Of a stretch of 64,000 nucleotides of DNA, positions 18,889 to 61,347 are shown piece by piece. The translations under genes and the position numbers were made by a program. The stretch is from Schmidtea nova (Eukaryota), in contig CM097883.1 of NCBI GenBank assembly GCA_044892505.1, forward strand, positions 241,490,001 to 241,554,000, given 5' to 3'. The notes below the pieces were generated by a model, which was given only the letters and a program-made list of their open reading frames with translations, searched no databases and had not been told where the DNA came from. Positions within the stretch are counted from its first letter, which is position 1; each line of letters begins with the position of its first letter.

Positions 18889-19136
18889 CTAACATTCCGG
18901 AGTTCCGGGAATAGATCTAGTGAAATTCTGAGGTATCCCATTGTTCTGTATTGTAGTAGTAAAAATGTCATCTGGTTCTTCATCATATGCTTGATTAATG
19001 AGATTTATTTGAGAATCGACTGGTGACTGTGAATATTCGACAGTTTTCTCATGCTTCGGTGATTTTGGTTTTGGGGCTTCGGCATAGTATATTGGACCAC
19101 TAACTTTCGGCGGTGGTCTCGATACTTTCTTTTCCA
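18889..19136 (-). CDS. Adhesion GPCR, probable last exon (Pro/Ser-rich cytoplasmic tail)
   Basis: T-rich TTTAG acceptor, phase 1 matching the exon-12 donor; VEKKVSRPPPKVSGP...TPEC*. A GTTAGT donor at the end is also possible. Confidence 0.55.
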
Positions 19137-28100: not shown

Positions 28101-31100
28101 TTACGCAAGAAAAAGTACCAGCCGAATCCGACATTAGACGCAGTGGGAGACATCGATCGAAACATAGATGTGGGTGCTGCTGATGAAAGGATATCATAAT
28201 ATTGTCAATGATAATTAACAATAATCGTGTTAATTATCGTTTTAATATTTTGTTTAAATAACTTATCATTTTATAATAAATATAATTTGAATATTAAGAA
28301 TTCTTATGCGTGCATTATAACAATAAGAATTAATATAAGAATTAAAATTGATTTATTTAGTTTGTGATTAGTTATCGTTTTACATATTTACACGCATTTA
28401 TTTTTACATTAAAACAAAACAAAAACATATAAAATATAGTAACTACAAGAGTTACTTACAGGTTGTGCTGAAATTCTGGTGCTGGTTGATGAATTGCATA
28501 TGAATCTATGGTGAACTCCATCTTTACTTTTCTGTACTTTTTTTTGAACGTGCATTTTTCGTTTTGTTATTTAAACAAAGTTTTTTTTAATCTTTTTAAT
28601 TTTTTAAATAACAGTTTAGTATAATATAATATAAATTGATCTATTTTAGTAATTTCTAAATATACATAAAGTAGAGGCACTACAGAGCGTCATATTTTTC
28701 TTGGTTTTTTTAATTGTAGTGTCAAACAATTGTGAAGTTTTGTGTGCTAAATTGTAAGGTAAACGAATGTGGATATGTCTGGGTGTTTGATTGTTTTATT
28801 TGTTTCTGATTACATGTGAAAATATGTTTGTGCGCGTGTGTCAAATACAGTAGTCTTTTTTCTAATTGCAACATAATTTATATGAAAAAGATGTGTTATT
28901 ATGGCAGAAATATAGTAATACAGATTCGATCAAAAATTACCTTTCACACTTGCCTGACTACCGTATTCAATTTCCATATTACTCAAGATTTTAATGCTTG
29001 AGTTGGGTCTTTCAATGTTCTTTACTTTTCTGCACATCGCATAACGAAAGTCTGGATTCATCAGACCATAGAAAATCAAAACCCATAAACCCTACCATAA
29101 AACAAATATTAAATGAGCAAATTCCATTATTATAGATAAAGATTAATTCAAACTATATTTTAACAAATTTATTTCAAATATGATATTTAACCTCTGTGTA
29201 CTCTGGCATTACCTTATTCATGCTAATAAAAATATTGATAAAAGTTTCCTGGGGGAAAATCTCCAAAGTTTATATGCCAGCGGTTTTCAAAGGTTGAATG
29301 TGTAACTCTAGTAGTATGCGAAGTGTTGGCAAGTGGTACACAGAAAAAAACAAAAATTGTTTTACCAATTTATGATTAAGATTGAAATTAATTTTATTTT
29401 AAAATGTAAAAACTCTTTTTACTAGATCTGCCCGTATGAGGTACCGAGCAGCTCGTTCTCCAAACACTTTCTGTTTTTAAATGTTGAAACATCACAAATT
29501 TGTCATTTATTTTTTATTTTTCACAGAAAATGTTATTATAAATTATAATTACATTATAACGATCATGTGATAGTGTCGGTATATTATAATTTAAATTAGT
29601 TATTATAATTGTAAAACCAACAATGAATAAATCGTTGAAAGGACAATCAATTAAAATGTTTTGCTGGTAGAAGTGAAATTAAATTTTTGTTTTAATGCAT
29701 TTTAAAATAAATACAGACAAGAGATAAATTCAAAACTCACGAAGCAACAAAATAGCATAAAAGCAACATTGAATGTTAAAGCACAACTAAGCTCAAAATA
29801 TTAAGCATGCGAACCACATTTCATAAGTCGGTCGAGGGAGGGATAAAACGATAGAAAAGAGGCATCTCAAAAGAGAGAACACAATTTGAGTTCAGGTTGA
29901 ATTTACACACATAGGACGGCACGAGAATTGAATGGGTAGGATCATTGCTCGTAAATTAGATACGAAAAAGTATGATCGAAAATAAAAATGTTATAAAAAT
30001 AAAGAATAATTTATTAAAAATTATGGTAGAAATCCCCATTAAAATATCGTTAAATTAACAGAAATAGAAATATAAATATAAAAATTTGATTATTTAATCA
30101 ATTAACGCATGAAATTTGTATTCCGTTGACAAGCATATCAAATCTAATGATTCGTATTTTGATAAATATAGTCAAGTTTTAACCAAGTTACAGCATTTCA
30201 AAAGTTATAGTAAAAACTGGATTAATTTTGCACCAACATTATAGTAATAATAATAGTTAATTTTTATGTAATAGGGATTTATAATTTAAATTAAATTAAA
30301 ATTTTATATTTTAATTATAAATAATTATGACCATGTCAATTTATTAATAAAACAAAACAAAACTTACTTGTAATGAACCGAAAATAGCAAAAATGTAGGC
30401 TGTAGGAATAATAGACGTTGCCATGAATATGGTCACGAAAATCCAGCTGATGAGCATTAGTGAAATAGTACAGGCAGTTTGTACAATATTATCTCTAAAT
30501 TTTGAAATTCATTTATTTTAATTATATTTTAAAAATTTTAGAATAGACTTTAAAAAATAAAAATCTATTCCTACAATTACTGCGTAACTTCGTTTGTGCT
30601 AAATTTGTGAATATTAAGCCCAGAATTTATTAACTAATTTTTAATCTGTATCCAAAAGCAAATTACCTATAGTTAATAAAAACATCTTATTCTTTGTACT
30701 TTTAAACTTGAAAAGTTGTTAATTGGAATTAAACAATAGGTTTCCATTTCATCATTTTCAATACTATCCTTTTTTTACTTAATACTACCTCCGTTCCACA
30801 ATAGTTGTCACATTTGGATATTTTTGGTCCGATTATTGAAAATGTATGCTATTTGAGTAATTTTGTTAAAGATTTGCTAAATTTGTACTGTTTTAATTAT
30901 TTTCTAAGTGCAAATTTAAGAAAAAAAATTGGAAGTATTTAGTTAAAAAATTAAAGAAATAAAGTATTAGTAGTATTACTCACAATACAATACTAGTTGT
31001 ATTATAGTGTAATTGTGTCTTTTTTTTAATTTGTACGCGCGTACACGCACATGCTCAGAAAGAACACTGAGTGTGATCTGTTAAATGTAAAGTTTTTGAC

Positions 31101-34100
31101 AATAAATTTTGCAATTGAAATCTCAACCTCCGAATAGTCCAGACCTAAATGTTTTGGATCTTGGGTTTTTTAATTCAATACAAGCATTGCAACATCAGAT
31201 GGTCACTAAAAATATTGATGATTTAATTAGTGCAGTAGAAACAGTTTTCCAACAATTGGATCGAGACACACTTAATAGTGTATTCTTAACACTACAAACA
31301 TGTATGGAAAATATCATGATATCAAACGGAAACAACTTTTATAAGATTACTCATATAAATAATGAAAAACTTCGAATAGAAAGTCGACTCCCCATAAATT
31401 TAAAATGTAATTTTTAAATATTGAATAACTGAAATAAATGTTACTACTATAAAATTAATAAAGAACTTATTTCTGACTCGCAATTTTTTATTCACCTATT
31501 GATCACCTATTTTTAGGTGCCCAAGCTTGTTAGAAAGCCTTGAGTAATCCTTTTAAACAAGCTATTTCTTTTGAAAATCGTTCTAACACAAGCGAAGCAA
31601 TATCTATAAAAGTTTTATCAAATGGGACAAGTATTATAGAACCAAATTTGTGCATCAAATGTGACAACTATTGTGGAACGGAGGTAGTATTTACTACTGT
31701 TCACTAATGTTTGATATTATTAATCGTTTAATGAGTGTGGTTTTATAACGCTACTGTCTTCCCCCGAGCATATTACGCGCGCGTACTATATTCGAATTTT
31801 ACTCTGTAAATATAATTTATTGATGAAGATGCTGATTGTAAGGAATTGCTGGATGCTGCTGAAAAACGTCCACAATGTTAAGCACAACGAATATTACGGT
31901 TTAAAATTATAAAATTCATTTAAAAATTTTTTTTTTCATTTTTTCTTTATTTTAAAGAATTAAATGAAGCTAAGAAATAGCTTTGAAATTTGCAATGTTA
32001 GTTTATTTTTATTTTATATAGAACTACTAGAAAGATTTATAATAATATTCGAATAAATACGCCTGTTATATTTGAGTGCACATTTAATTTGAAAAAAATA
32101 TATAGTATTTCAAATTTTCAATATTTTCGAGAAATTTGATTATAACACGCGCGTATTATATTCGGGGAAAGACTGTAGTACAGGTAACCCTCGTTTAACG
32201 CGGTTGTTAAACTAAAATTATTTTAAATGTTAGATAAATTGTTTCAAAATATAATTAAATTTTTAACTTCTTTTCTTATTATAATCTTTTTCTTATATAT
32301 AAATTTTTAGTTTTATTTAACATGGTTTTAGTTAACACGGAACCAGTTAACCGCATTAAACGAGGGTTGCCTGTATTAAAAATATAAATATTCAATTTTC
32401 AAATTTATTTTAATTACTTTTTTTTGTAAAAGTACTTATTCTTATATGTAAATTAATATAAAAATAATTTTAAGTTTAAAATTTAAAATTTTTAAAAACA
32501 ATTTTTACCAGATTTATCTTTGAAAAAGGCAGTCTTATATAAATAAAAATATTTATCTACTAGCTGTAACTCTCGAAAAATCACGTGATTTGTCGACAAA
32601 ATTATGTCTCATAGATCATGAATTATATCTTAATTTTATAAATACACCGTTACTGACAAACATCAAAAATTTTAGATTTTTATTTATTTTAATTAATTAT
32701 TTAAAAATATTAAGTAAAACAAACAAAATTTTTTTAAAAAAATTTAAAATACAAATTTTATTAACTTACGTATAATGGTAATTATATAATTTGATAGTTT
32801 AAAATGAAGATAAAAGAAATAGCTAATGATTTTTTATTATTAAATGACAATTGATTAATATTTTTTTAAAAATTACCACATATTAATAAAATATTTCGGT
32901 CACTAGTGAAAAGTATAACTTTTTTTAAACTTTTTTTAAATTTTTTTGTCAAATTTATTAATTTGTGTTTTGAAACTTGAATTTTAAAATTTATTGAAAA
33001 TTTATTTGAAAATTTACCTGGCTTCTTCGAGAATTTCTCCTTTGATTGCAGGAGTATTGATATTGCAAGCCACAATGAGACAAGCTAATATTGTACAAAA
33101 AATAAATGCAATAATTGGTCCAAGAAATGACCATAAACTACTGTCAAATAGAGTAAGCCAGCAGTATGTATTACGACCGTAAGCATCTATATTCGAACCA
33201 GCAGTTTTGGCCACTATTATAATTGGTATACCCCATGCTATAGGAAAATAGTACTTCAATCGACCAGTTATAATACCCGAGGTTATTGCATAAAACACAA
33301 ATAATGCTTCGAAAAACATCCAAGTAAAAGTAGACGTGAAAAATAGGTGCATTATAATCCCAACAGTTCGACAGAACGTTTGATTCATTTGCCCGGGAAT
33401 TACTAATAAAAATGCCAAAGATCCGATAAAGAGAGATATTGCCATGTTGAGATGGATGATATATCTTGTTCCTCGCAAGGTCTTTGAAACAGCGATTGTG
33501 ATGATGAATATCAAAAGAGCTACTAATGAAATTCCCATTCCGCAATATGTGATTATGTTCACTGCTTGCATGTAATCGTATGAAGGAATTGTTGGCTGCA
33601 TTAGGATAGCAAAACTTGTCAGATGCTCACATTGGAAAACTACGTTTGTCGAATTCCAAAACGCTGCTTTACATCCTGAATTGTCCCATGCTCCGAACGA
33701 CGGAGTTGTCATATTTAACGAGTCATTCCAAAATGCAACTGCCCATTGATACTTTAACTGGGTTCGATCGGGTTCTACCGTATCCCATGGCGCAAAGCTT
33801 CCAAATCTCACATTGGGACTATTGAATCTTAAATTTATATTCACAATATTATTTCCGGGGTTGGGAACAAAAGCTGGATTGGTGTTGATTGTCAATATTT
33901 TACTGTTGACAATTAGCGAATTTGGAATGGAGGAATTCGCAATTGTAGGCATGATCTGTGGAGCGTTGTAAATCGCCGATGCGACTGCTACGACCGGTTG
34001 ATTGTTTTGAATGGTTTGCTGTGTAATCGTGAAGGATTCACTCCAGCCAAACCAAACGCTAGAATTTTGACTCCAAGCAATATCCCCATAATTTGGAAGG

Positions 34101-38572: not shown

Positions 38573-38615
<43 letters not shown>

Positions 38616-38657
38616 TAATTATTATTAATTATTATTAATTATTATTAATTATTATTA

Positions 38658-38697
<40 letters not shown>

Positions 38698-47600: not shown

Positions 47601-48161
47601 ATCAAAATTTTATATTTTACATAAATTTTTACAATTTACTTTTACATTTTTTTATATTTATACTATCAAAATTAATATAATTAATTATTAAAATTTTTTG
47701 AATTTTTTATATTTATCTAATTTTTTATTGAGTTTTTTTGTTAATTTGTTTTGTTTGTGGTTACTTCTTGCTTTTGTTCACTTTAAATTTGACTTATGTT
47801 TTAATTAATTTTTTCTTATGTGTTTCTAATTATTTTTGTTTATTTGGTGTTTGCTCAAATATTTGAGTATACTTCTTGTGCGCTCTCTACATGTTATGTC
47901 TGCGCTCGCTTCCAAATTAATAAGATTTAGTTTTTTCCCAACACGAAGCCTAAAAAATGGTCCCTAAAAAATTCATCAAAACTTGCATTGGTGTTGGGTC
48001 CATCCTTTAAATTGACATTTTGTTTTTTTCAAACTTATACTCTATAATTTACTATAGAAAGGTGGCTAAACTTTTTTCCCATAATATTAATGAAGCCCTG
48101 TTGTTTGTGGAGGCGACAACTCTGAATTCAGGTCATAGTAAAAGTTTTAATTTTCTTTATC

Positions 48162-48222
<61 letters not shown>

Positions 48223-51200
48223 GATGAAATTGATAAATATTTGATTTTGAATATTTCTAGTATACAAAAATTAATGCCTCATGTCAATATTTACGTGATA
48301 AGTTTTGCAGAAAAGGTTATCATGTTGAGATTGTGATTAAGAAACGTGAACCGTGTCAGTTGAAGATTGTAGCTTTAGTGAAATCGAGTATATTAATAAC
48401 AGTATTTGAAAATAAAGAAAAAGAATATGACTGAAAAAATCTATATATTAAATTCACTTACTTGTATAGCCCAAAAATCTGTGCGCCTCGAAATTAAATA
48501 AATACCGAGTCCAAATAACAACATCGTTAATAATAGCATTTACGAGTGAGTTATTGGAACCACTTCCTATAAGAATGTCAGATACGTTGACATCAGTTGA
48601 GTAGTTCTGAATTCTGTATTGAGAAAGATTGGCCGCTGATGATCCGGTGTCGATATATCCGTTTATGTATATTTCCAACCGAGTAAAGTTGGTGTTTACC
48701 GTGAATCCGTAATTTTGCCATGAATCCAAAAGTACATTTGACGATCTTTGACCAGCAACAATCGACGTTCCATTATATACTATAGAAAAATTTAATGAAA
48801 AATAATATTTAGGAATATTGGTTTCATTTACCTAAAAAGACAAACGTTCCTCTTGAATACATGATTCGTATACTATTGACAATGACAAATAAATCTCCTC
48901 TTCTAGTTCCGCTTGGGATCATTGTCCAAAATGATATTGATAACCCGCTTCTACATGCCGTGAAAATGCAGGGGCATCGATTGATAAATCTTCTTGGCTA
49001 AAAATTGTAATGAAAATATCAAAAATGAATAAGTGAATATTTATTTCGGAAGAGGTCTAAGAGTTTACACGCGGATTGGCTACTGTATATGTTTATTCCA
49101 AAGAACTTTCATTATATTACATACTGACAAGATGTCACATTAAAATAACTCTTACTCTCAAAAGCAGTGATTTTCAGCCGTTTTAGCTTGCCGCACACTA
49201 AATGAATGTTAAAATTTTCGCCGCACATCTGGAAAGACTTAAAAACTTTTATGGCATAAAAGTTTGATATCTATTTATATTGATTTAATGATACGATTGC
49301 ACTTGCTATTAAGAGCAAATAAAATTATAGTGAGGCTCCAATGTCGACAAACAAGCTGACATTTCGTCGTCTATCGGAAGAAGTCTTTATTGTTTTGAAG
49401 TAAACGTTCAAAAATGATATCAGACGAAAATTTCTACTTAAAAATCTGTTAAAATGTTTTGTGTATTTTAAATTTCCCTTAAAAACCCAAGCAATTTAAA
49501 ATATTTTCACAATTTATCCAGCACACAGCGCTAATATGCCGTGGCACACAAATTGAGAATCATTGCTCCAATGTCAACAGAAAAATCGTGTAGAAAGTTC
49601 CATAATAAATAATAAAAATAAAATGAAATCATTTTCCATGATCGACAAAATCTTTAATATGGTTCACCAGTGAATAAATATCAATTTTTCAATTTTTTTT
49701 CTCTTTATGTTTGATCAACAATTAAAATCACTCAAAATTTTGAGTCATATTTTAATTTTTTGATCAATTGTATTTTGAATAAACGAAACAAAAAGAACTT
49801 GAATATATTTCATCATGTTTATTGCTTTTATTAATTTTTATCAAAAATGACACGAATTTTTGAAATATCCATTGTTTAGAAAAGTTACTCTACGAATGCC
49901 AATTTATAATATAATCAGATATTTAAATATGCGCTATAAAAAGTAATTACATATTTACGCAGTAAAACTAAAACTAAAACAAATAACTTTCGAGCTAAAT
50001 TATTTAAAATATCAAATGTCAAACTTTGGATTTTGAAAATCCGACATTTCATACTTATTGATTTAATAAATAATTTGTTTGTGTATAAAAATTTAACAAT
50101 AATAATTTTTTATTGAAGACTTTAGAGAGCGTCAAGTAAGAACATTCCATTTGGAAGAGGATAAATGGTATCGCAAAGGGGGGCATATGTTGACTGGTTG
50201 GTGGTCAAAGTTAATACAATAATAATAAGGACGTACCCAAAAAGTATAATTAACTTTTCTTTTCTTCTCTATTCTCATCATAATTAACTTTTGGTTTCAT
50301 CTTTGATCTCTTTTTTTAATTCAATAACATTCATATTAATTTTTGTAAGACTATAGATCAAAATTTTTATCAAGTGTGTATTTTTTTTAAATATACACTT
50401 GACAAAGGCTATTTCGAAATATCGTGTAGCTAACAATCAAAATATTTTTGATCTATGGTCTTTCAAAATTTAATATGAAAATTATTCTATTTTTATTAAA
50501 TAAAATTTGTTTCATCAAAATAATGTATGTACCAGAGAGGATAAAAAGAAGAGATTTGCACAAGAGGTGGAGTGTAAAACTATTATTTTTATAGAGGACA
50601 TCCTTAATGGAGGCTATTTTACTGTATATAATAGAAAGTTAACTCTGGTTTCCTGGAGGAAAATAACTCAAAATCAATGTATGTGGTTATAAAGACTGAA
50701 TAATTTTCGGTTTATATTATGTAACTGTTGAGGAAAGCAAATTAAAAAGAGTTGTTCTGACTTTATATCAGAAAGAAATAATACAAAATAGACAATTGAA
50801 TTTTTTCTAATTTATTGCCACAAAAAGGCCAGTAAACAAAATCATAAAAAGATCAAAGAAAAAGAAGATTAAAGATTTTTATGATACAAATTTATCAGTT
50901 TAATCTTTATCGTCCATTTCACCAATTAGCGGAGTTTACCGAAAATAAGACCAGCGCTAATATTAAGAAAAATGGGGTTTTTTGAAAAAAATAAAAAACC
51001 CAAAAAAAAGACCGTTCTTATTTTTTACAGTCAATCTTGATTTCGAATGACCAGTTGTATTTACTTCAGTATTTTTTTTCTCCTTTGAAAGAGACTGTTC
51101 TGCTACCCACCATATCGTGGGGTCTTATTTTCGGTAAACTCCAGTATCTATTTTTTATTATAATTTATATTATCTTAATTTTTTTTAACTATGTTTGAAT

Positions 51201-51539
51201 ATTTTGTGTCAAATATAAATTGTTAACTTAGTGTCAAAGAAAAAATTATTTTGAAATTATTTGTATTTAAAATTAAATATTTTACTATAAATAGATTTTC
51301 ATATTGAAGAGTCCACAGGATTTTTCTAGGGGGGGTCAAAATTAAAATTTCTTTATAAAAATGCCATCTGTAGCGCTCTACAAGATAAGTACCCGTTGCA
51401 TTCATAATAGATCTGCCATATATTTTGTTAACATGATAATAATTGATATCAGAAACAAATTTAAATATCTATTTCTTTTGTGAATGATACCAATGTGGGA
51501 GGTTTATTAGGAGACATAGTAGGATTGAATGTGGGTAGG

Positions 51540-51608
<69 letters not shown>

Positions 51609-54600
51609 TCAGTCACTATTACAATCAACACATTTCCTAGTGTATTTTAAGACAAAAACATTCCATTTAAAAAAGGAAACATTAGATATCATTTATCAAT
51701 TTAAATAATTTTATTTCATAATAAGTTTGAATTTCTTTCATGCAAAACGTAACGTTAAAACTACATATCTACGTGGTGCGCCCAATAAGTTGTGAGACTA
51801 ATATAGAAATAATAATAGTAAAAAAATTGATACAGACATATTTAAACTTCAACATATATAGGTAAAGAAAATGTATTTTGTTTTAATAATCCATTATTGT
51901 TTAAGTATATTTTTTGCGAACATTCGAAAAATGCCTCTGGAAACTATTCAATACCGTAGCATTATTCGCTTTCTCTTTCTGAAAGGAAAAAATATAGAAG
52001 AGGTTCTTTCTGAACTGAAAGCTGTTTACCAACAAGAGTGCCCGTCCACAGCAACAATTTATCGATGGTTCAATTACTTTCAGTGGTAGAACCTCCGTGG
52101 TGGACGAAGAAAGATCTGGAAGACTCTCAGAAATTGATGAAAAAATAACGCGAAAGCTGCAGACAATCGTGCAAAACGAGAGAAAAATAACGACGAGAGA
52201 GCTCACAACCCGTCTAAATGTGAGCAAAGGCACTGTGCATACTCTCCTCACTGAAAATGGTATTCGAAAACTATGTTCCCGTTTTGTGCCACGCTTCTTA
52301 ACGGTGGAAATGCGACAACGACGCTTGGAATGCTGCTTAGAAAATCTGCAGATCAAGACCAATGTTGGAGACCGTTTCATTGATAATATCATCACTGTGG
52401 ACGAGACACCGTTGTCCCTTTATGTCCCCGAATCTAAAAGAGAGCCTCAAGAATGGAAACTGCCAGGAGAAAGCAGCTCACTGAAAACGCGGTCCTCAAC
52501 TTGCCACCGAAAGGCTCTCATGCTGACGGTGTTTTGGCATTATTCTGACTGACTTTGCTGAATCCGGCGTGAAGATCAATAGTTCTTACTACTCCAACAT
52601 CGTGCAGCAAGCGAGGAAAGCACGACGCAAGATCCGAGTGTGTGATCTCTATTTTTTACACGATAATGTTCCCATCCACACCATCAGCGTTTCCATGGCC
52701 AAAATTGTTCGTTGCGGGCTCAATTTGCTTCCCCATCCACCATACAGCCTCGATTAGGCTCCCTCCGATTTTTCCTGTTTAACCATCTTAAGAAGCATCT
52801 GTGGGGCCAGGTGTTTGCCAACAAAAATGATTTGAGAGCAGCCGTGGAGAGTTTTCTGGGAGAAAAGCCTCCAGAATTCTTCAAAAACGCCTTCGAAAAC
52901 CTCGTTATTCGCTGGGAAAATTGTGTCAGTGCAAAAGGAAATTTTTTTGAGAAATGATGCCTATTTACCATGCTTGTTCTAAATACAAAGTTTTGTGTTG
53001 ATATCTTAAGTCTTTCTATTTTAGTCTCACGACTTATTGGGTGCACCACGTATACATGTTTTCTTACTTAGAAAAAATTAATTAATAAAATATATAATTA
53101 AATTTATAGTATATGTAATTTTTATAGAAATTATACATACTCCAAAAACTTGAAAAATTACTTTATTTAAATTTATTTTTGAATTGTTTGAAGTTAGTTG
53201 AAATCCCGTTCTTGGATTTGTTACAATGTTTACAAGTTCCGTTGAAATCTTGGTGTTTGACGTTGAATAGTAAGCGTCACTGACAGTATAATAAGGATTT
53301 GCGTCATTTGATGAACCAACCAATTCAATAATATTTTTGGAAAAATCATATTTCTTTATGGGAGCAGACGTAGTTGTTGTCATTATCGTTGGTACGTTAA
53401 CAGGAACCATTTGATAGACTGAAATATTAAATAATCATAAATGTATCTTTTACAAACTGAATACCAATTTGGCTTGTCAAAATTTCTTTAAGTCTAACAG
53501 GCCACATCCACATTGACACATGTCCAACAGATATCTTAGGAGTTGTCTTTGGATAGACATCTCCTGAGAGTTGCTTCCGACATCCAAGAAACACTTTCGT
53601 TGCAACAGGATAGTTTTTGTTATGAATAGCTTTTGTTCCTGATTTCACTACAAACTGATCCCCAATGAGTAGCTATAATTTTTATATTTAAGTGAACATT
53701 TACAAAAAAGTATCTTACCCTTATTTCTCCAGTTGATCTTATCCATGAAAATCCAACAATTAGCCATATGCCTGTATATTTTGTCATGGGCGTTTGAGCA
53801 GTCCACATATTATTTCTTCCCGTTATTATTAATGTTAACTGGCCTAGTTGGAAATAAAACTCAAATCCTTGTGAGCCGTCAAATCCTAAAATTTTTAAAA
53901 ATAGTAAAATTATTTTCTCAGTTCATGATATCAATAATTTTCATAATTGTATAATTATAGATCAAAATTTGATAAAAACACTTGCTTAAGGCTGTACCGA
54001 AATATCGTCTACTTAACAACCTAAAAATCAGAAAAAAATCTTTGATCAATAGTCATATAATTATGAAAATTATCGATATAAATAAAAAGAGATCAAAAGT
54101 CAAACCAAGATATAATTATGTTTGTTCGTGATGTTTATTTTTTAGTGTCTTGCTATTTATATAAAATGGTAAATTAAGATTTTAATTACTTTTCAACAAA
54201 TTTATAAAATATAAATTTAAGTTTGTTTTGTATGGAGAATTTATTGCATACTACTCTAATTAAAAGTTCCTTAGTCATTTCATTTCACATTTTTTTTGTT
54301 AAACCTGTAGCAAAGTGTTCACCTATAATCTATGAATTAAAGATAACGGAATTTGAAATTGAAATAGATAAAAAATAGATCAATAGTAAAAAAGATAAAA
54401 GATTTCTAGTTACGCGGGAACATGACATAGGAATCTGATAATGAAAATAAAGCTTTAAATTTCTATATGATAATAATGATCATTTGGTCAAATATTGGTG
54501 AATAAATGCATTGTATTTGTTTAGATACGAAGAGAAGGTCAAGTTCAAATCTTTTAATTAATGTAAGTTCTTGGTGATGGAAAGAAATGCGACATTGTAT

Positions 54601-57600
54601 TAAATCAAAATAAAGAATGGTTTATACAGTCAGTAACTAACGGAAGTCATTGTAGTGGTCCTTTAAAAAAGTCAACTTAACTGTGTAATTGTTGTAAAAA
54701 TTTGCTATGCCTAAGTGTTATTAGAGCCCTTTCATTAAAATATTTGATGACAAAATTTATAGGTAGATATGGAAAACATGACTAATACGCCATTTATATT
54801 ACATTCGGAAAAACTATTAATCGGCCCAACCCTGGATTTACCCTTAGGATGACACGACTGAGGCCTAGGGCCCAGACTAGCTAAGGCAACTTATTCCGCT
54901 TTATTTTATTGCACGTTTTAATAATACTAGATTTCGCAGAAAAAAAATCTCTTAGAAAATGTTTACAAATTTAATGCTTTCTTTTTTATTTATTAGTTCA
55001 TGTTTAGTACTCATTTAATTTATGTACTCACTTATTTTATATCTGCAATTTGAATAAATGGTACAATTATATTATTTTCACAATTAAACTATTATTTTAA
55101 TTATACAACAACAAGAAACCAATAAAAATTTTCATTTTTCAAAAAAATTGATAAAAGGCTCCCATTAATTTTTCAGCCTAGGGCCTCCTCAAGGGTCCTC
55201 AGTCAAGTCAGTCCTTGACTGAATCGGCTATTAAAATTATATTTCTAAAATATTAAAATATTTTGTTTGAAATATTAATTTGGAAGGGTATTATGTATAT
55301 AAAACGAAAGCCATTGACGTGTGAATATAATAAAAATGAATATTAAAATGCATGAGCTTATAAATTTCTTTTTTTAATATTTTAGAGGACATCTTGTAAA
55401 AACAGAGTTCTTTAATAATATATAGTTTATAGTTCCTAGATCACCGAAGGACTTGGGAAAGATTCCGTTGATTAGCAACCGATTTTCTAAAATTGGTGCT
55501 GACCACATAAAATTCAGTTAAGTTTTTGTTTTTTATTTTGGAAATACTGAGAAATATTTTGGTAAACTTTATGGTCAAATGATTATTTTTATGGGTGAGT
55601 GACTATCTAAAACAATGATTCTAAACCGGTTTATGGCTTGCAGCACAATAAGTGAATCTTAAAATTTTCGTGACACACCTAGAAAGACAATTTTTATGGC
55701 ATATATTTATTTAAATTGTTTTAATGAGAAGGTTGTGTCTGCTTTCGAAAGTAAATCAAACTGTAGTGAAGTTTCAATGTCGACAAACAAGTGCGCATTT
55801 CGTCGGTTCGAAGAAGCCTCTCTTGCTTTTAAGGAAACGATCCAAAAATATATCAAACAAAGATTTTTGTTTAAAAATCCGTTTTAGTGTATTTTAAATT
55901 TTTCTTTCGATTTTAAATATTTTCTAAATTTCTAGCGCACATAGGTTGATAATAACTGGTCTAAACTATTTTTTAATGTGATACTCGATACGATTTCAAA
56001 TGGCATACTAATCTTAATCTTAGTTGACTTACAACAGCACTGTATAAGAAACACGACTATATCCAGATCAAACCAATTTACCTTGTAATAAGGCCCCATA
56101 AATTAAACACTCGGCCACCAGGCCACATCCAATACTACAATTGTGCCACTTTCATCATATGAATAAATACATTTAATATATTACAAACTGTGTACACCGT
56201 GTTTCACTCAATGGGTAACCTATTTATACGTACAATGCACATGTGGGAGACGCGTCCAGGATTATAATTAATCATTGTGTAAAAATATTCTGCATTAGCC
56301 ATTTTAAAATGGCTTTCAGGTAATTTTATTTATTAGGATAACTTTGAAGGCTTTTTTGATCTCATAATGATATGATATAACTGTAAAAGCTTTAATAGAT
56401 TATATTTGCTCTACAATTTTATTTTTAATCACTTTGTAGGAAATTATGACTTTTTAAAAGAAAATTTTGGATTTATTTAAAATCAAAGTAAGTTACAATC
56501 ATTTTTAACTAAAATTTATTCATAAAAAACTGATCTTCGAGTCTTGCTACTACCTTTTCTGTTTTTTTCTAGATGGTCATATTTTTCATATTTAAAAAAT
56601 ATTTTTCTTATCGAATTTTTGATAGCCCAAGTAAACTTTACAAATGAAATGTACTCTTCTTTATTTTCCTTTGCATTTATTATTCTTGCTTTGTCGATAT
56701 CTGAAGTCCTATAAAAATCTAATAACTTTTTAAATATATATTATTTCAACGATTTTCGAACATTTGTTCAGGTATCGAACGAAGTGCAGTTGGTCAACGT
56801 ACCTGGAATATCTAAAAGGCTCAGACCTTAGTAAATAAAAATTAGTGATACCATATTCCAACTTCATTTTTTTCATAATATAAGCATATAGATTATTATA
56901 GGTGGCCCCATTGAGTGAAATACGGTGTATATGAAAAAGTTATATCATCCTTGTGCCTCCAAATAAGTCTCAATACAGTTAGAGTTTCTAAAGGAATTTT
57001 TTGACGGTAAGTATTTAAGTAAAATCATATGGTTTTGGTTTATTAGATGACTGGCTGCTTTAAAAAATGCAACGATATCTTTGACGGTTAACATTTCATT
57101 TTGATTGAAGGGAAGAAAAGTTATTATTAATAATTACCTGAAGCTAGAAACGTGTCTTTGGATATAACTGCGTCATCATTATACTTAAACCACATTGCTG
57201 CTGAAATTCCATATTCGCACTGTTCGATTTCTCCCAAGCACAATTGATTATAAAGATGGTCATCACTAATCGTAAACAATTCTAAACATTGAGGATCTCC
57301 CGAAAGAAGTAAACTTGGTGAATCGCCTTGAAATAAAGGACTGTCAGATAGATTTGGACTTGGTAAAGTTTTCGGAGCAACGGGTACAAAATAATTGACG
57401 GCCAAAAGACTAGAGAAATATTTTGTCAAGTTTGAATCAGTTCCATAACGAATTTTGAGAGCTGTAATAAGGAAATTATCGTTGGAAGCTCGATCAACGA
57501 TTGCTCCATTGTCATAATACCAATGATGACTTGCAGTTGAAGTGTATTTAATATCTAAAATTGTAGCTTTAATAAGGTTAATGTAATTTAGAAAGTATTT

Positions 57601-60600: not shown

Positions 60601-61347
60601 ACCATTTCTAAGCGATCTAAGAAATATTATACTGACTATATAAAATGTTAAAAAAAATTTAATTTATCGAATATTTTAGTAACTTTTATTAAAAAATCGT
60701 TTATTTCAATTCTTTCCAATTGTATATCAATGAGTTGTTTTTTATTTAACAAAAATTTTCAACAGACTTTTTCTGTGTTTTTAAATTTTGTTAGATTTTA
60801 AAATTAAAAATCTTAAAATATATTTTTGAAATTATTCCGAAAAAGTTGACAATTTAACACTGCATATTGTAATGAACTTCACACTTACTTAAAAGATTTT
60901 CGATAGGAAGTGTGTAATTGTCTAAGGAACCCAAGGTTTGAGTAATTGTTGTTGATGCTATAGAATTTGTTGTTGATGCTATAGAATTTGTTGTTGATGC
61001 TATAGAATTTGTTGTTGATGCTATAGAATTTGTTGTTGATGCTATAGAATTTGTTGTTGATGATATAGAATTTGTTGTTGTAGATGTTTGAGATTGGGTG
61101 GACTGAACTCTTATAATTTGAGTTAATGTTGACTGAGGTGAACTGAATGTAGCTAAAGTTGTTGATATTGAATCTGAAGGACTTTTAGACGATGTTAACG
61201 TAGTAACTGTCAATGTGGTAGAATTTTGACCCAAACTAGAAACACTTGGTGTAATTTGTGTATTGGTAGTACTGACCGATGTCTGCAAATTATCTGTATT
61301 TACTTGTGAAATCGAACTCGTTGTTGGATTAGTAGTAGTTATTGTTT
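18889..61347 (-). CDS. Giant adhesion GPCR (Ser/Thr stalk, 6 LamG/pentraxin-like repeats, GAIN/GPS, 7TM); ADGRD1/GPR133-like repeat type; 13 exons, 5' end unresolved
   Basis: Exons 61347-60889, 57554-57138, 53885-53719, 53672-53465, 53418-53162, 48997-48832, 48779-48462, 46165-45920, 39640-39332, 36846-33018, 30494-30368, 29091-28941, 19136-18889. All GT..AG and phase-compatible, giving ~2,300 aa without stops. GPS WDNSGC..QCEHLTSFAILM; TM7 YIFAIFGSLQG. Confidence 0.85.
20138..20378. mobile_element. piggyBac-type MITE (241 bp)
   Basis: TTAA-CCCCTTTACCG ... CGGTAAAGGGG-TTAA; subterminal direct repeat CTCGGGTCTACCGGT twice. Confidence 0.9.
20811..20940. mobile_element. hAT (Buster-type) MITE (130 bp)
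   Basis: TIR CAGCGGTCGGAAACC / GGTTCCCGACCGATG, perfect 8-bp TSD CTATAGAT. Confidence 0.9.
21882..24276 (-). pseudogene. Fragmented RT-RNase H-integrase of E3
   Basis: SPWASPIHLV..RPCGDYRRLN, IDLQKAY, YVDDIL, TDASNTAIG, HIDLVGP, TDRGAQF; many frameshifts and stops. Confidence 0.9.
24321..28322 (+). mobile_element. LTR retrotransposon E4 (Mag-like Gypsy), complete, 4.0 kb, very recent
   Basis: 131-bp LTRs 24321-24451 and 28192-28322 (1 mismatch; TA..CA ends), 5-bp TSD ATAAG (24316-24320, 28323-28327), PBS TGGCGTCACGA at 24453, PPT GATGAAAGGA 28182-28191. Confidence 0.95.
24452..28183 (+). CDS. Intact single-ORF Gag-Pol of E4 (1243 aa from MASRLEEL)
   Basis: Mag-type knuckle CHYCDRIH..CPAYGKKCTNCDRMNHFAKAC, protease DTGASVS, RT YQDDVL, RNase H TDASK, integrase H..H..CxxC and HMDWA / SDNAQEF / NGSAER. 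The track start at 24356 lies inside the LTR. Confidence 0.92.
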   Translation: MASRLEELNLDDNINVEIWLTAFGAMSRANKWVDSDKSRQIMDNFLSVCGLKALTKIQHMASPKLLEEMTFSEIKAMLLNHTQPKSKVVIAERARFYQLRQEPKEKLADFYIRLKKAAIYCDFKKLKESTDPNEDMLLMALISGIYDINAKEKILLQMSAGIPTCNEILAQMQTYEEISTFISLQHGTKPTITSTTDEINFIKKKRSNLGTSRKFEEKGNQRCHYCDRIHEPKKCPAYGKKCTNCDRMNHFAKACRSSTKSIHGTFADQTSSADESDRQYINQFTSNNITSDINPVLLGTTIVKMQKDTGASVSIISSKMWEDMGRPKLDKTRRKLEVYDGHIMQCHGSFLTTVEWEKQVLPVTITVIQSMKDFGLIGMDILQQTRHGILQCQITKTTESQVLPAIKGIKASMDLIDDAKPMFCKARPIPLALENKVNDELIRLQRLGVISPCTKPVLNSSPVVWVKKSNGDLRLCVDFKVHINKKIKTDAYPIPNVETIFSKLKNANKFAKLDLTSAYWQIELDDKAKEISCINTTKGMFIVNRLQMGMKNASAIFQRTMEQILKDIKGILIYQDDVLIYAENEESLRNRLQTVKSRLKEKKVTINQAKTIELTNSVSFLGFEISSKGITPDKSLVSKINNIKEPTCKDEVESFIGLINYFGRLIPNFSDKTRVINELRKKGVKFDWNKECSNQFKALKQEISTYPVVQPYSLEKEATLTTDASKHAIAAVLTQDGHPVIYISRTLSAAEKNYSNIEREALAIVWSISRLQHFLLGRKFKVNTDHQPLQSLFGSESPIPRQTSNRISRWAMLLMQYDYEIYYVMGKQIPHADALSRLKFIDEKEANEEIKTKNTLSVFTVQFSEGLLNASEVRLETSLNELARDIMRRIKKGNWSKCSQSEMPFKKISDRLTIEDGLIYHGSRLFIPPKLRKKCIDIAHNETHSGLQSTFYRLKASSWWPGIHGDIDNFIRSCAICKKLHPRPEKSIHKWPEAKPFQRVHMDWAHIKEVGDVLIIVDAGSGWIEAFKTSDKTSKSVITCLRTVFTRFGVPECIVSDNAQEFTSHELNAWINSQGAMKLESPAYFPRSNGSAERAVQTVKKALKGWNELRTHCDFNTFLQKILFHHRISSTSRGKSPAEIVFGRQPRAPIMSKFQQGQDIWYKASEDVEPKEGEFIMTKGNNTSYITIESQNDNVTLVSNNQISDHRQIQEVKDAQLTQEKVPAESDIRRSGRHRSKHRCGCC
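28941..29091 (-). CDS. Adhesion GPCR exon 12 (end of TM7, helix 8)
   Basis: GLWVLIFYGLMNPDFRYAMCRK...; phase-0 acceptor continues SLQ|G; donor AAAG|GTAATT. Not in the ORF track. Confidence 0.85.
30368..30494 (-). CDS. Adhesion GPCR exon 11 (TM6 and start of TM7)
   Basis: RDNIVQTACTISLMLISWIFVTIFMATSIIPTAYIFAIFGSLQ; phase 2 in, phase 0 out; TTTAG/GTAAG sites. Confidence 0.88.
30785..31687 (+). mobile_element. DD39D/Stowaway-like mariner derivative (903 bp) with transposase C-terminus
   Basis: Perfect 32-bp TIR CTACCTCCGTTCCACAATAGTTGTCACATTTG with TA flanks; ORF 31109-31417 QPPNSPDLNVLDLGFFNSIQALQ. Confidence 0.9.
31754..32175. mobile_element. pogo-like MITE
   Basis: TA-flanked imperfect TIR CTGTCTTCCCCCGAGCATATTACGCGCG / reverse complement CAGTCTTTCCCCGAATATAATACGCGCG. 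Confidence 0.75.
32181..32373. mobile_element. Tigger-like MITE (193 bp)
   Basis: TA-CAGGTAACCCTCGTTTAACGCGGTT ... AACCGCATTAAACGAGGGTTGCCTG-TA; directly abuts the previous MITE. Confidence 0.85.
33018..36846 (-). CDS. Adhesion GPCR exon 10 (3.8 kb: LamG-like repeats, GAIN/GPS, TM1-TM5)
   Basis: Track ORF 33014-36838; acceptor TTCAG|GA GAA TGG, donor GCC AG|GTAAAT; HLTSFAILM followed by five hydrophobic helices. Confidence 0.95.
37874..39205. mobile_element. Foldback/MULE-like element with 15-bp subterminal tandem arrays
   Basis: Left (ACGAAATTACACAAG)n and right inverted (GTAATTTCGTCTTGT)n; 8-bp TSD GTATTCAC (37866-37873, 39206-39213). Interior has gaps, (AAT)n and a palindrome. Confidence 0.75.
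38371..38559. repeat. Perfect palindrome, 90-bp arms, 9-nt loop
   Basis: 38371-38460 is the exact reverse complement of 38470-38559. Related asymmetric copies at ~50330-50480 and ~53940-54090. Confidence 0.9.
39332..39640 (-). CDS. Adhesion GPCR exon 9 (LamG-like repeat 3)
   Basis: KCLFDPTYDNCRYNGVTISMWMK..FFLSTG..GISIF..WSII; phase 1-1. Confidence 0.88.
39864..40718 (+). mobile_element. Tigger/pogo-like deletion derivative
   Basis: TIR CAGTAAAATCTCGTAACTATGCCACT / reverse complement CAGTCAAATCTCGATACTATGCCACT. ~40420-40610 reads EEVVSFEKAKRAC..RQKKMRQPTI, like a Tigger C-terminus. Confidence 0.75.
42835..43651 (-). mobile_element. Probable solo-LTR-like repeat, divergent family member
   Basis: TGACTCCTTGTGCTCTTTAA matches copy 1 at 19/20; GCTCGGATTTTCC and CTTTATATAG motifs occur in the same order. 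Confidence 0.45.
45541..45831. mobile_element. hAT (Buster-type) MITE
   Basis: CAGGGGCTGCAAA ... TTTGAAAACACTG, perfect TSD AAATATAG; homologous to 17228-17529. Confidence 0.85.
45920..46165 (-). CDS. Adhesion GPCR exon 8
   Basis: SSQMKQLNFAKNYWTPD...DYLLLG; phase 1-1; track ORF 45885-46157. Confidence 0.82.
48462..48997 (-). CDS. Adhesion GPCR exons 6-7 (48997-48832, 48779-48462; LamG-like repeat 2)
   Basis: RCPCIFTACRSGLSISFW.. and WQNYGFTV..LEIYING..IINDVVIW; 52-nt intron 48780-48831. Confidence 0.85.
49165..49565 (-). mobile_element. Old Buster-like hAT derivative
   Basis: CAGTGATTTTCA / TGAGAATCATTG ends; core ATGTCGACAAACAAG..ATTTCGTCG shared with ~55770-55810; degenerate TSD. Confidence 0.5.
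50929..51144. mobile_element. pogo-like MITE
   Basis: 22-bp perfect IR GGAGTTTACCGAAAATAAGACC / GGTCTTATTTTCGGTAAACTCC with TA flanks. Confidence 0.75.
51772..53050 (+). mobile_element. Full-length mariner (DD34D) element, 1279 bp
   Basis: TA-flanked TIR CGTGGTGC(G/A)CCCAATAAGT(T/C)GTGAGACTAAA. Confidence 0.95.
51931..52957 (+). pseudogene. Frameshifted mariner transposase
   Basis: MPLETIQYRSIIRFLF (HTH), LCSRFVPRFLT, TVDET, HDNVP, HPPYS.DL; split over four track ORFs by about three frameshifts. Confidence 0.92.
53162..53885 (-). CDS. Adhesion GPCR exons 3-5 (53885-53719, 53672-53465, 53418-53162)
   Basis: GFDGSQGFEFYF..MWTAQ..WLIVGFSW; VFLGC..SVGHVSMW; Thr-rich linker. Two 46-nt introns. 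The exon-5 donor could alternatively be at 53141 (same phase). Confidence 0.82.
56195..56927. mobile_element. Tc1/mariner-type MITE (733 bp)
   Basis: TA-CACCGTGTTTCACTCAATGGG ... CCCATTGAGTGAAATACGGTG-TA. Confidence 0.85.
57138..57554 (-). CDS. Adhesion GPCR exon 2 (start of LamG-like repeat 1)
   Basis: HHWYYD..LCLGEIEQCEYGISAAMWFK..TFLASG; phase 1-1; extends track ORF 57127-57429 upstream to a TTTTAG acceptor. Confidence 0.85.
57776..58126 (+). mobile_element. hAT MITE retaining the last transposase codons
   Basis: TIR CAGAGGCGTAACTA / TAGGTACGCCACTG, perfect TSD TATGCGGT; internal DFDNIIKQFASAKARKINL*. Confidence 0.88.
58560..59210 (-). mobile_element. Probable solo-LTR-like repeat, close relative of 4270-4978
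   Basis: Colinear CGCTCGGGCTTT, GCTCGGGTTT.CCATT, TTTCCCCC, TTTTAATTAATTTTT and AACCCCAACA motifs. Confidence 0.5.
59320..59998 (+). mobile_element. 5'-truncated Tigger/pogo element (transposase C-terminus and right TIR)
   Basis: KQITIANCFRHCGF, ORF 59548-59865 ending RQRQLTIPEMFK*, right end TTCGAATTAACGAGATTTTACTG-TA. Confidence 0.75.
60889..61347 (-). CDS. Adhesion GPCR exon 1 (most 5' exon found; Ser/Thr-rich stalk)
   Basis: Track ORF 60854-61357; CTAG acceptor and A|GTAAGT donor, phase 1-1, matches the exon-2 acceptor. Linkage to the gene is inferred from strand and phase. Confidence 0.7.
60946..61059. repeat. 21-bp coding tandem repeat (TTGTTGTTGATGCTATAGAAT), ~5 copies
   Basis: Encodes NSIASTT repeats on the minus strand. 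Confidence 0.92.

What the first reader, a model, noticed from the sequence alone, without database searches (positions are those of the whole stretch)
18889..61347. ~2,300-aa adhesion GPCR with six tandem LamG/pentraxin-like repeats, mostly missed by the ORF track
Seen: 13 exons splice in frame. The motif C-x(4-7)-C-x(2-3)-G-(L/I/V/F)-(T/S)-I-S-x-W ... W-x-x-(I/V)-G-x-x-W ... (N/S)-D-(I/V)-V-I-W recurs six times (degenerate in repeat 5) before GAIN/GPS and 7TM. Known: vertebrate ADGRD1/GPR133 carries one such pentraxin-like domain (CISKPEQCGPEGVTFSFFW-type). Inference: an amplified, multivalent lectin/adhesion or mechanosensing receptor in an invertebrate; the most substantial host system here.
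Basis: partly seen in the sequence, partly recalled or inferred. Interest (0 to 1): 0.7.

Follow-up and report, generated by a model that had tools for sequence, protein, structure and literature searches.

The report
Flatworm adhesion GPCR with six LamG domains
The minus strand carries one large, apparently intact gene for a cell-surface adhesion receptor with six lectin-like domains in a row; it is real, but it is the flatworm copy of an old, uncharacterised animal gene family already present in public databases, not a new invention.

Summary
Thirteen minus-strand exons (61347 to 18889) join through GT..AG sites with matching phases into 2,299 codons and one terminal stop. The giant exon 10 holds Laminin_G_3, GPS and 7tm_2 (Pfam). 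A canonical HL|TSFAILMQP site is present.

Profiles built only from relatives hit exons 2-10 in order, abutting at the predicted junctions and across the assembly gap, which lies in an intron. Exons 11-12 supply TM6-7. AlphaFold models give ConA/LamG jelly rolls for repeats 5 and 6, and a complete GAIN domain.

The six repeats are not an amplification in this lineage. Every full-length relative examined from 11 species (flatworms, nemerteans, a brachiopod, echinoderms) has exactly six, and the window's repeats match them position for position. Membership of ADGRD could not be shown, because the 7TM scores equally against ADGRL3 and ADGRD1.

Not verified:
- Exon 1 (Ser/Thr-rich), the start codon and signal peptide, and exon 13. 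None has homolog support.
- Expression.

Verdict: a new member of a known kind, of moderate interest.

The parts
60889..61347 (-). Exon 1 (putative): Ser/Thr-rich, mucin-like, with six TNSIAST-type tandem units. It has no ATG and no signal peptide, so the 5' end of the gene is unresolved.
   Evidence: It lies in an open frame of 180 codons in AT-rich DNA, with donor taaGTAAGT in phase 1, matching E2. No homolog matches it. By analogy, the N-termini of the nemertean and Schistosoma mekongi orthologues before R1 are also 46-61% Ser+Thr.
57138..57554 (-). Exon 2: first half of repeat 1 (IKYTSTASHHW ... CLGEIEQCEYGISAAMW). An alternative acceptor at 57566 is in the same phase and adds 4 aa.
   Evidence: The homolog-only R1 HMM, positions 13-149, scores E 1.8e-17. 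It is collinear with residues about 55-240 of the flatworm orthologues.
53719..53885 (-). Exon 3: middle of repeat 1 (WLIVGFSW).
   Evidence: R1 HMM positions 150-204 score E 2e-10 and abut E2. Splice sites.
53465..53672 (-). Exon 4: end of repeat 1, after a 46-nt intron.
   Evidence: R1 HMM positions 216-277 score E 1.2e-6. Splice sites.
53162..53418 (-). Exon 5: linker and head of repeat 2, after a 46-nt intron.
   Evidence: R2 HMM positions 2-78 score E 1.4e-6. The hit ends at the 53162 donor.
48832..48997 (-). Exon 6: repeat 2 Cys motif (CPCIFTACRSGLSISFW).
   Evidence: R2 HMM positions 78-128 score E 2.9e-7.
48462..48779 (-). Exon 7: second half of repeat 2 (NDVVIW), after a 52-nt intron.
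   Evidence: R2 HMM positions 130-240 score E 6.9e-22.
45920..46165 (-). Exon 8: head of repeat 3 (NYWTPDSY...).
   Evidence: R3 HMM positions 2-57 score E 1.3e-4. It matches the start of the Trichobilharzia model P0001.
39332..39640 (-). Exon 9: repeat 3 Cys motif (CLFDPTYDNCRYNGVTISMW).
   Evidence: R3 HMM positions 60-151 score E 5e-24.
37994..38994 (.). Three assembly gaps (N runs) with low-complexity flanks, lying inside the E9-E10 intron.
   Evidence: N runs listed. The homolog profile is continuous across E9/E10. P0004 holds both parts in one frame.
33018..36846 (-). Exon 10 (3,829 nt): tail of repeat 3, repeats 4-6, GAIN/GPS and TM1-5.
   Evidence: Pfam 7tm_2 1.8e-30, Laminin_G_3 1.7e-16, GPS 4e-9.
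35855..36589 (-). Repeat 4 (CPVLLNGCPYGFSIGGW).
   Evidence: Family HMM envelope. Homolog-only R4 HMM scores 79.7 bits, against 35-43 for the other positions. Not folded.
35246..35890 (-). Repeat 5. The sequence motif is degenerate but the fold is kept.
   Evidence: R5 HMM scores 121 bits. In the AF2 model, residues 1-189 are a jelly roll with Z 15, rmsd 3.0 A over about 172 aa.
34580..35290 (-). Repeat 6 (CLTDPKLCTNGLTISFW ... NDIVIW). This is the Laminin_G_3 Pfam hit, next to the GAIN domain.
33593..34579 (-). GAIN domain with GPS. The cleavage motif HL|T is at 33617-33622 and the Stachel TSFAILMQP at 33593-33619.
   Evidence: AF2 pLDDT 79, pTM 0.81. Foldseek best match is BAI3 GAIN at E 5e-17, TM 0.64-0.66. 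Motif coordinates.
30368..30494 (-). Exon 11: TM6 and the start of TM7 (...FGSLQ).
   Evidence: E11 joined to E12 aligns with TM6-7 of the relatives at E 1e-7 to 5e-10. The whole 7TM aligns as one stretch.
28941..29091 (-). Exon 12: end of TM7 (GLWVLIFYGLMNPDFRY) and start of the tail. If it is not spliced, the frame stops after KGNF at 28933.
18889..19136 (-). Exon 13 (putative): 82-aa Pro/Lys-rich cytoplasmic tail and the stop codon, reached across a 9.8-kb intron filled with retroelements.
   Evidence: Phase-matched TTTTAG acceptor. GC is 0.40 against 0.23-0.28 in the flanks. It is single-copy in the genome. No homolog support.

Best explanation
This is one intact gene for an adhesion (class B2) GPCR of about 2,300 residues in a flatworm genome. 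It is the orthologue of a conserved but uncharacterised bilaterian family.

Architecture: a variable, often Ser/Thr-rich N-terminus, then six non-interchangeable ConA-like (Laminin_G_3) domains, then GAIN/GPS, then the 7TM.

Shown here:
- the exon structure from E2 to E12;
- the six domains and their one-to-one correspondence with the six domains of relatives in four phyla;
- LamG/ConA folds for repeats 5 and 6;
- a complete GAIN fold;
- a canonical HL|T site followed by the tethered-agonist sequence TSFAILMQP;
- seven TM helices with the class-B2 TM6 Trp and the TM7 SLQG motif.

Inferred from what is established for adhesion GPCRs:
- The protein cleaves itself at HL|T in the ER and stays as a non-covalent NTF/CTF pair.
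- The roughly 1,900-residue NTF, a mucin-like stalk plus six lectin-fold domains, binds matrix, glycan or cell-surface partners.
- Pulling or ligand-induced rearrangement exposes the Stachel, which docks into the 7TM and activates a G protein. Gs is a guess from ADGRD1.
For: - Frame and splice sites.
- Pfam domains.
- Relatives of 2,100-2,600 aa in flatworms, nemerteans, Lingula and echinoderms.
- Exactly six repeats in every full-length relative.
- Position-for-position match: diagonal scores of 80-202 bits against 17-73 off the diagonal.
- Homolog-only HMMs hit E2-E10 collinearly.
- Full-length orthologues are collinear with the exons.
- TM6-7 lie in E11/E12.
- The tree places the window inside the flatworm clade, next to the parasitic flatworms.
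- Folds: for LamG; for GAIN.
- GPS and Stachel alignment.
- Seven hydrophobic helices.
Against: - There is no transcript evidence.
- No start codon or signal peptide was found in the window. The best candidate lies beyond it and does not match the phase of the chosen E1 acceptor.
- E1 and E13 have no homolog support.
- Many relatives are themselves computational gene models.
- The window and its nearest relative lack two of the four GPS cysteines, which could affect GAIN stability or cleavage.
- Ligand, cleavage and G-protein coupling are untested.
Confidence: 0.82

Rival explanations
1. One reading: a lineage-specific amplification of the single pentraxin/LamG3 domain of an ADGRD1-type receptor, giving a new multivalent receptor in this invertebrate.
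For: ADGRD1 has one PTX/LamG3 domain before its GAIN (PMC4982218). NCBI names the crinoid member 'ADGRD1-like'. Two Schmidtea receptors were said to resemble GPR133 (PMC3261222). The Stachel and 7TM resemble ADGRD1 as much as ADGRL3.
Against: Six repeats are present in every full-length relative from echinoderms to flatworms, and each window repeat matches the same-numbered repeat of the relatives far better than its own neighbours. The array therefore predates these phyla. Single-LamG3 invertebrate aGPCRs exist alongside it, and their one domain matches R6 in some and R1 in others.
Confidence: 0.04
2. There are two genes. The upstream exons (E1-E7, repeats 1-2) belong to a separate secreted LamG protein, and the receptor starts at E8, as in the Trichobilharzia model P0001.
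For: P0001 begins with a Met exactly at the E8 equivalent. No RNA evidence links E7 to E8.
Against: At least ten orthologues carry R1 and R2 in the same polypeptide as R3-R6, GAIN and 7TM. E7 to E8 is phase-matched with strong sites. P0001 also lacks most of its 7TM, so it is a fragmentary model.
Confidence: 0.05
3. It is a silent or decaying gene copy: an open frame kept by chance or only recently inactivated, with large introns invaded by transposons.
For: Introns hold an intact Ty3/gypsy-type element, a degraded one and Tc1/mariner remnants. No start codon was found. Two GPS cysteines are lost. No RNA run is on record as RNA.
Against: 2,299 codons run without a stop in DNA of 27-30% G+C, where stops are expected about every 12 codons. 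All 12 junctions are intact. The conserved motifs are kept (HL|T, Stachel, TM6 W, TM7 QG). The same Cys pair is lost in the nearest relative, which fits a tolerated lineage trait. It is the only copy in the genome.
Confidence: 0.05

Closest known systems
Unnamed six-Laminin_G_3 adhesion GPCR orthologues, for example Tubulanus polymorphus XP_074646025.1, Lineus longissimus XP_064639912.1, Lingula anatina XP_013394840.1, Taenia crassiceps KAL5106458.1, Schistosoma mekongi KAK4474744.1 and Acanthaster planci XP_022103402.1
   Same: - Length of 2,100-2,600 aa.
- Six ConA-like repeats that correspond position by position.
- GAIN/GPS, Stachel TxFAILMQP and a 7tm_2 domain.
- A Ser/Thr-rich N-terminus in several of them.

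   Different: - Only 20-32% identity.
- The starfish protein adds about nine EGF domains at the N-terminus.
- The window and P0004 lack GPS Cys1 and Cys3.
- Parasitic flatworms have an insertion between the Stachel and TM1, and often a non-canonical cleavage site.
Vertebrate ADGRD1/GPR133 (874 aa; SP-PTX/LamG3-GAIN-7TM; Gs-coupled; PMC4982218)
   Same: The same domain type (Laminin_G_3) sits directly before the GAIN. The Stachel and 7TM are similar: 88.7 bits for TM1-5, and 214 bits with the family profile.
   Different: It has one domain instead of six and is about 1,400 residues shorter. The 7TM is no closer to ADGRD1 than to ADGRL3 or ADGRL2. Orthology was not shown.
Latrophilins (ADGRL1-3 / Cirl)
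   Same: ADGRL3 is the best-scoring solved 7TM and GAIN by sequence (4e-36; 1e-101 with the profile). Several flatworm members are annotated 'latrophilin-like'.
   Different: No RBL/SUEL lectin, olfactomedin or HormR domains were found. The extracellular region is built of LamG3 domains instead.
Tandem LG/LNS domain proteins (laminin alpha LG4-5, neurexin-1 alpha, Gas6) and ConA-like lectin modules (sialidase CBM40, the HcN domain of clostridial neurotoxins)
   Same: They share the fold of repeats 5 and 6: Foldseek E 1e-11 to LG pairs, and Z 14-15.5 with rmsd about 3 A over about 170 aa.
   Different: Sequence identity is 9-17%. There is no sequence-level match in the PDB. Ligand-binding or Ca2+ sites were not examined. 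A shared fold does not give a shared function.

Membership tests
Adhesion GPCR (class B2) | Secretin-type seven-transmembrane domain (Pfam 7tm_2) | tested here: met
   7tm_2 scores 1.8e-30 over profile positions 2-181 in E10. TM6-7 in E11+E12 align to the relatives, and the whole 7TM aligns as one stretch. Seven hydrophobic helices are present.
Adhesion GPCR (class B2) | GAIN domain with GPS motif directly before TM1 | tested here: met
   Pfam GPS 4e-9. The AF2 model has six helices followed by a beta sandwich, and Foldseek finds BAI3, ADGRB2, CELSR1 and latrophilin GAIN domains at E 5e-17 to 2.5e-12. Two of the four GPS cysteines are missing.
Adhesion GPCR (class B2) | Autoproteolysis at HL|T/S and a tethered agonist (Stachel) | not testable with these tools
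   The sequence EHL|TSFAILMQP is present at 33593-33622. Cleavage and agonism need experiments.
Six-Laminin_G_3 adhesion GPCR orthogroup (unnamed) | Six ConA-like repeats, each orthologous to the same-numbered repeat of other members | tested here: met
   The window has six domains, and so does each of the 11 full-length relatives checked. Diagonal scores are 138/155/202/80/121/116 bits, against 17-73 off the diagonal, using HMMs that exclude the window.
Six-Laminin_G_3 adhesion GPCR orthogroup (unnamed) | Groups with family members in a tree in a position that fits the species tree | tested here: met
   In a FastTree LG tree of 18 rows, the flatworm side (window, P0004, Macrostomum, parasitic flatworms) is separated from nemerteans, brachiopod and echinoderms with support 100. 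The window is sister to the parasitic flatworms with support 83. The tree is quick and has no bootstrap.
ADGRD (GPR133/GPR144) | 7TM closest to ADGRD among aGPCR families | tested here: inconclusive
   Scores for 7TM-only PDB constructs (window is TM1-5 only):
- window: ADGRL3 92.8, ADGRD1 88.7, ADGRE5 88.2 bits;
- family profile: ADGRL3 224, ADGRL2 220, ADGRD1 214;
- crinoid member: ADGRD1 96-99 against ADGRL3 83.
No ADGRD1/2 reference sequences could be fetched for a tree.
ADGRD (GPR133/GPR144) | Extracellular region with one PTX/LamG3 domain plus GAIN | tested here: not met
   There are six domains. The ADGRD1 architecture is taken from PMC4982218.
LamG / ConA-like lectin-glucanase fold | Pfam Laminin_G_3 above the gathering score, and a jelly-roll beta sandwich | tested here: met
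   Laminin_G_3 scores 61.2 bits against a cut-off of 27.6, with two stretches in E10. R5 and R6 were modelled (pLDDT 82.8) and match LG pairs, CBM40 and HcN. The Atlas neighbours are all Laminin_G_3. R1-R4 rest on profile homology only, because spliced repeats could not be sent to the fold tool.
Pentraxin | Match to the Pfam Pentaxin family or signature | tested here: not met
   No Pentaxin hit at E<=0.1 in any exon. 'Pentraxin-like' holds only at superfamily-fold level.

The most novel reading that the evidence does not exclude
The six-LamG3 receptor is an ancestral bilaterian adhesion GPCR, and the vertebrate ADGRD receptors (GPR133/GPR144), still largely orphan, descend from it after losing five of the six domains. 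If so, the flatworm gene would be a tractable stand-in for finding what the LamG3 module of ADGRD binds, through RNAi, regeneration and in situ work. The fixed identity of the six positions over more than 500 million years would point to six different binding partners, or to a defined rod-like mechanical element, rather than simple multivalency.
Probability: 0.25. Interest if true: 0.55.

Novelty: new member of a known kind. Interest (0 to 1): 0.4.

Why it matters
It gives a near-complete gene model for a very large receptor that ORF-based tracks would cut into pieces.

It also shows that this architecture is not a curiosity of one genome. It is a deeply conserved family, unnamed and, in the papers searched, undescribed. 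The family is found in flatworms (including schistosomes, liver flukes and tapeworms), nemerteans, a brachiopod and echinoderms.

Conserved, parasite-encoded surface GPCRs with a large extracellular part are of interest as drug or vaccine targets. The family could also inform the origin of ADGRD/ADGRL-type receptors. None of this changes current views of adhesion GPCR mechanism.

Tried and rejected
1. RNA evidence. The look-up of sequencing runs found four runs of one 2024 study, of unknown kind, holding 92-100% of E10's sampled words.
- Those places lie in the E7-E8 intron.
- I sent them to no database or search tool afterwards.
- Local scripts after that call (37, 60) re-used a six-frame translation file of the whole window that had been made earlier.

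2. The word-index protein search with E10 gave only one true relative. The exhaustive search was needed.

3. The same tool with the crinoid 7TM returned ADGRE2-like and ADGRL2/Cirl proteins but no ADGRD1, so no reference set for a 7TM tree could be built.

4. I tested whether single-LamG3 aGPCRs keep 'repeat 6'. Their domain matches R6 best in some and R1 in others, so there is no conclusion. P0148 (875 aa) is not an ADGRD1 orthologue.

5. A search for a signal-peptide exon up to 10 kb beyond the window gave only weak candidates. The best is MLFNLLLIIFGILFFLEDAY at about 65981, with a phase-2 donor that does not fit the phase-1 acceptor at 61347.

6. Repeat 6 alone has no sequence match in the PDB.

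7. The IQ-TREE run did not finish in time, so FastTree was used.

8. The joined (spliced) protein was not sent to Pfam, PDB, the fold tools, the Atlas or the protein searches. Those ran on single exons by reference. The joined model was used only inside local scripts for the frame check and for comparison with fetched relatives.

9. One call failed on a frame error.

Full report
**Where and what**

The finding lies on the minus strand. A single open frame at 33017-36862 (1,282 codons) dominates it. Pfam finds three families there: 7tm_2 (1.8e-30, profile positions 2-181 of 250), Laminin_G_3 (1.7e-16, two stretches) and GPS (4e-9). The locus therefore encodes an adhesion GPCR whose last two helices must lie downstream.

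**Gene model**

I listed minus-strand stop-to-stop segments and all GT and AG sites with their phases. This gave 13 exons:

| Exon | Coordinates |
|---|---|
| E1 | 61347-60889 |
| E2 | 57554-57138 |
| E3 | 53885-53719 |
| E4 | 53672-53465 |
| E5 | 53418-53162 |
| E6 | 48997-48832 |
| E7 | 48779-48462 |
| E8 | 46165-45920 |
| E9 | 39640-39332 |
| E10 | 36846-33018 |
| E11 | 30494-30368 |
| E12 | 29091-28941 |
| E13 | 19136-18889 |

- All 12 introns start with GTAAG, GTAAT, GTAAA or GTATT and end in a T-rich tract plus TAG or CAG.
- All phases match. The product is 2,299 residues with one stop at the end.
- Three introns are only 46-52 nt long.
- Exons have 32-40% G+C, against 17-36% in their flanks.

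**Independent support from relatives**

The word-index search found only a fragmentary Trichobilharzia model, so I ran the exhaustive search with repeats 4-6, GAIN and TM1-5. It returned a set of proteins of 2,100-2,600 aa with several matched stretches. Their sources are:

- nemerteans: Lineus, Tubulanus;
- flatworms: Macrostomum, Cichlidogyrus, Paragonimus, Dicrocoelium, Opisthorchis, Schistosoma mekongi, Taenia, Mesocestoides;
- the brachiopod Lingula;
- echinoderms: Acanthaster, Antedon, Anneissia.

Most are called 'uncharacterized', 'GPS domain-containing', 'latrophilin-like' or 'ADGRD1-like'.

Full-length flatworm members align collinearly with E2, E3, E6, E7, E8, E9 and E10. HMMs built for each repeat position from ten relatives only hit the exons as follows:

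- R1 profile: E2, E3, E4;
- R2 profile: E5, E6, E7;
- R3 profile: E8, E9 and the head of E10.

The profile coordinates abut at the predicted junctions (149|150, 78|78, 151|147). No hit at E<=1 fell on the plus strand. E11+E12 align with TM6-7 of the relatives, and the whole 7TM aligns as one ungapped stretch.

The assembly gaps (37994-38994) lie inside the E9-E10 intron, and nothing coding is missing there. The profile is continuous across that junction, and the nearest relative (P0004, a genomic Logan contig) carries both parts in one open frame.

**The repeats**

- The six units start about every 194-256 residues and are 13-26% identical to each other.
- With a family HMM, the window and every full-length relative have exactly six units.
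- The units are not interchangeable. Window R1..R6 score 138, 155, 202, 80, 121 and 116 bits against the same-numbered homolog-only HMM, and 17-73 bits against the others.
- The array was therefore already six-fold, with differentiated positions, in the common ancestor of echinoderms and flatworms. This contradicts an amplification within this lineage.

**Folds**

- Repeats 5+6, modelled with an alignment of 20 relatives, gave mean pLDDT 82.8 and two all-beta domains.
  - Foldseek's best matches are LG/LNS domain pairs: laminin alpha2 and alpha1 LG4-5, neurexin L2-L3 and Gas6, at E about 1e-11.
  - Each domain aligns at Z 14-15.5, rmsd about 3 A, over about 170 residues with ConA-like lectin modules and LG domains.
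  - The sequence-degenerate repeat 5 keeps the fold.
- The segment between repeat 6 and TM1 (pLDDT 79.4, pTM 0.81) is a full GAIN domain. Its best match is BAI3 at E 5e-17, TM 0.64-0.66, followed by ADGRB2, CELSR1, latrophilins, GPR110, GPR126 and CD97.
- Repeats 1-4 were not folded. Repeats 1-3 are spliced, and joined sequence was not sent to the tools.

**Signalling parts**

- The GPS reads ...GCKAAFWNSTNVVFQCEHL|TSFAILMQP. The HL|T site is canonical, and the Stachel is almost identical to the nemertean TNFAILMQP.
- The window and P0004 both lack GPS Cys1 and Cys3, presumably one disulfide pair.
- Seven hydrophobic helices are present, with the TM6 Trp and the TM7 SLQG motif.
- Self-cleavage, tethered agonism and mechanical or ligand activation are inferred from established adhesion-GPCR biology. 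They were not shown here.

**Family placement**

- Against solved structures, the 7TM scores about equally with ADGRL3, ADGRL2 and ADGRD1, and lower with ADGRE, G and F.
- After the family itself, the next-best database hits are mixed invertebrate aGPCRs with C-type lectin, HYR, Ig or CELSR-type ectodomains.
- ADGRD1 has one PTX/LamG3 domain before its GAIN (PMC4982218). Zamanian et al. noted two GPR133-like Schmidtea receptors (PMC3261222).
- Membership of ADGRD is nevertheless not established. One defining feature, a single domain, is not met, and the 7TM test is inconclusive.
- Single-LamG3 invertebrate receptors exist as well, and their domain does not consistently match repeat 6.
- Reviews of aGPCR classification state that invertebrate clusters outside the nine vertebrate families exist but are uncharacterised (PMC6900090). 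I found no paper describing this six-domain family.

**Host**

A quick tree follows the species tree and puts the window in the flatworm clade, next to the parasitic flatworms. Together with the AT-rich genome of 1.25 Gb and the introns of about 50 nt, a free-living flatworm is likely. The species was not determined.

**Open points**

- E1 is a 152-residue Ser/Thr-rich stretch with tandem units.
  - It has no ATG, no signal peptide and no homolog match.
  - Its inclusion is supported only by a strong phase-matched donor and by analogy with the Ser/Thr-rich N-termini of the nemertean and S. mekongi orthologues.
- The E2 acceptor may be 57566 instead of 57554. Both are in phase 1, and 57566 would keep the conserved D-(I/V)-(K/R)-Y.
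- E13 is single-copy and phase-matched, but it lies 9.8 kb away behind retroelements. Without that splice the protein ends four residues after E12.
- No RNA evidence was obtained.
- The joined model was used only in local scripts.

**Verdict**

The gene is a new member (a flatworm orthologue) of an existing, catalogued but uncharacterised family. Interest is moderate. It comes mainly from the family-level result of six fixed, position-specific LamG3 domains conserved across phyla.

Noticed in passing
window 24356-28183 (+): An uninterrupted 1,275-codon gag-pol frame of a Ty3/gypsy-type LTR retrotransposon (aspartyl protease, RVT_1, RNase H, integrase zinc domain, rve) sits inside the putative E12-E13 intron, antisense to the receptor gene. 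Observed only.
   Followed up: partly
window 21882-24128 (-): Broken RT, RNase H and integrase-like frames of a second retroelement lie directly beside the intact one and in the opposite orientation to it.
   Followed up: partly
window 51871-52957 (+) and 31109-31417 (+): Tc1/mariner-type transposase remnants (HTH_Tnp_Tc3_2, in split frames) lie in the E5-E6 intron. A further transposase-looking 102-aa frame without a Pfam hit lies in the E10-E11 intron.
   Followed up: partly
window 33617-33760 (-), GPS motif: The window and its nearest relative P0004 both lack the first and third of the four GPS cysteines (replaced by V/A and F/A), while all other relatives keep them. This looks like the loss of one disulfide as a pair.
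   Followed up: partly
window 36847-39331 versus relative P0004 (Logan run ERR14224706, 7.1-kb contig): The E9-E10 intron of the window is absent in the relative, where both parts form one 1,359-codon frame. The relative's frame ends close to the window's E10 donor, so the E10-E11 intron position seems to be shared.
   Followed up: partly
window 38400-39220 (-): The assembly gaps are flanked by short tandem repeats (translated as KLHKTKLH / DEITQDEIT units) and A/T-only low-complexity runs, which probably caused the gaps.
   Followed up: no
window 62370-62680: A patch richer in G+C than its surroundings holds 49-60-codon open frames on the minus strand, upstream of E1. It could be an exon of this or of a neighbouring gene. 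No signal-peptide exon with a fitting phase was found there.
   Followed up: partly
window ~48050-48240 and ~51480-51640: Long (TA/TATA-type) microsatellites, translated as YIYIYI runs, lie in the E7-E8 and E5-E6 introns.
   Followed up: no
relatives P0013 / P0016 (Paragonimus westermani and P. heterotremus): The two Paragonimus proteins fall in different places of the trematode clade in the quick tree, which suggests two paralogues of this receptor in trematodes.
   Followed up: no
Nothing is known about it, and it was left alone.
   Followed up: no
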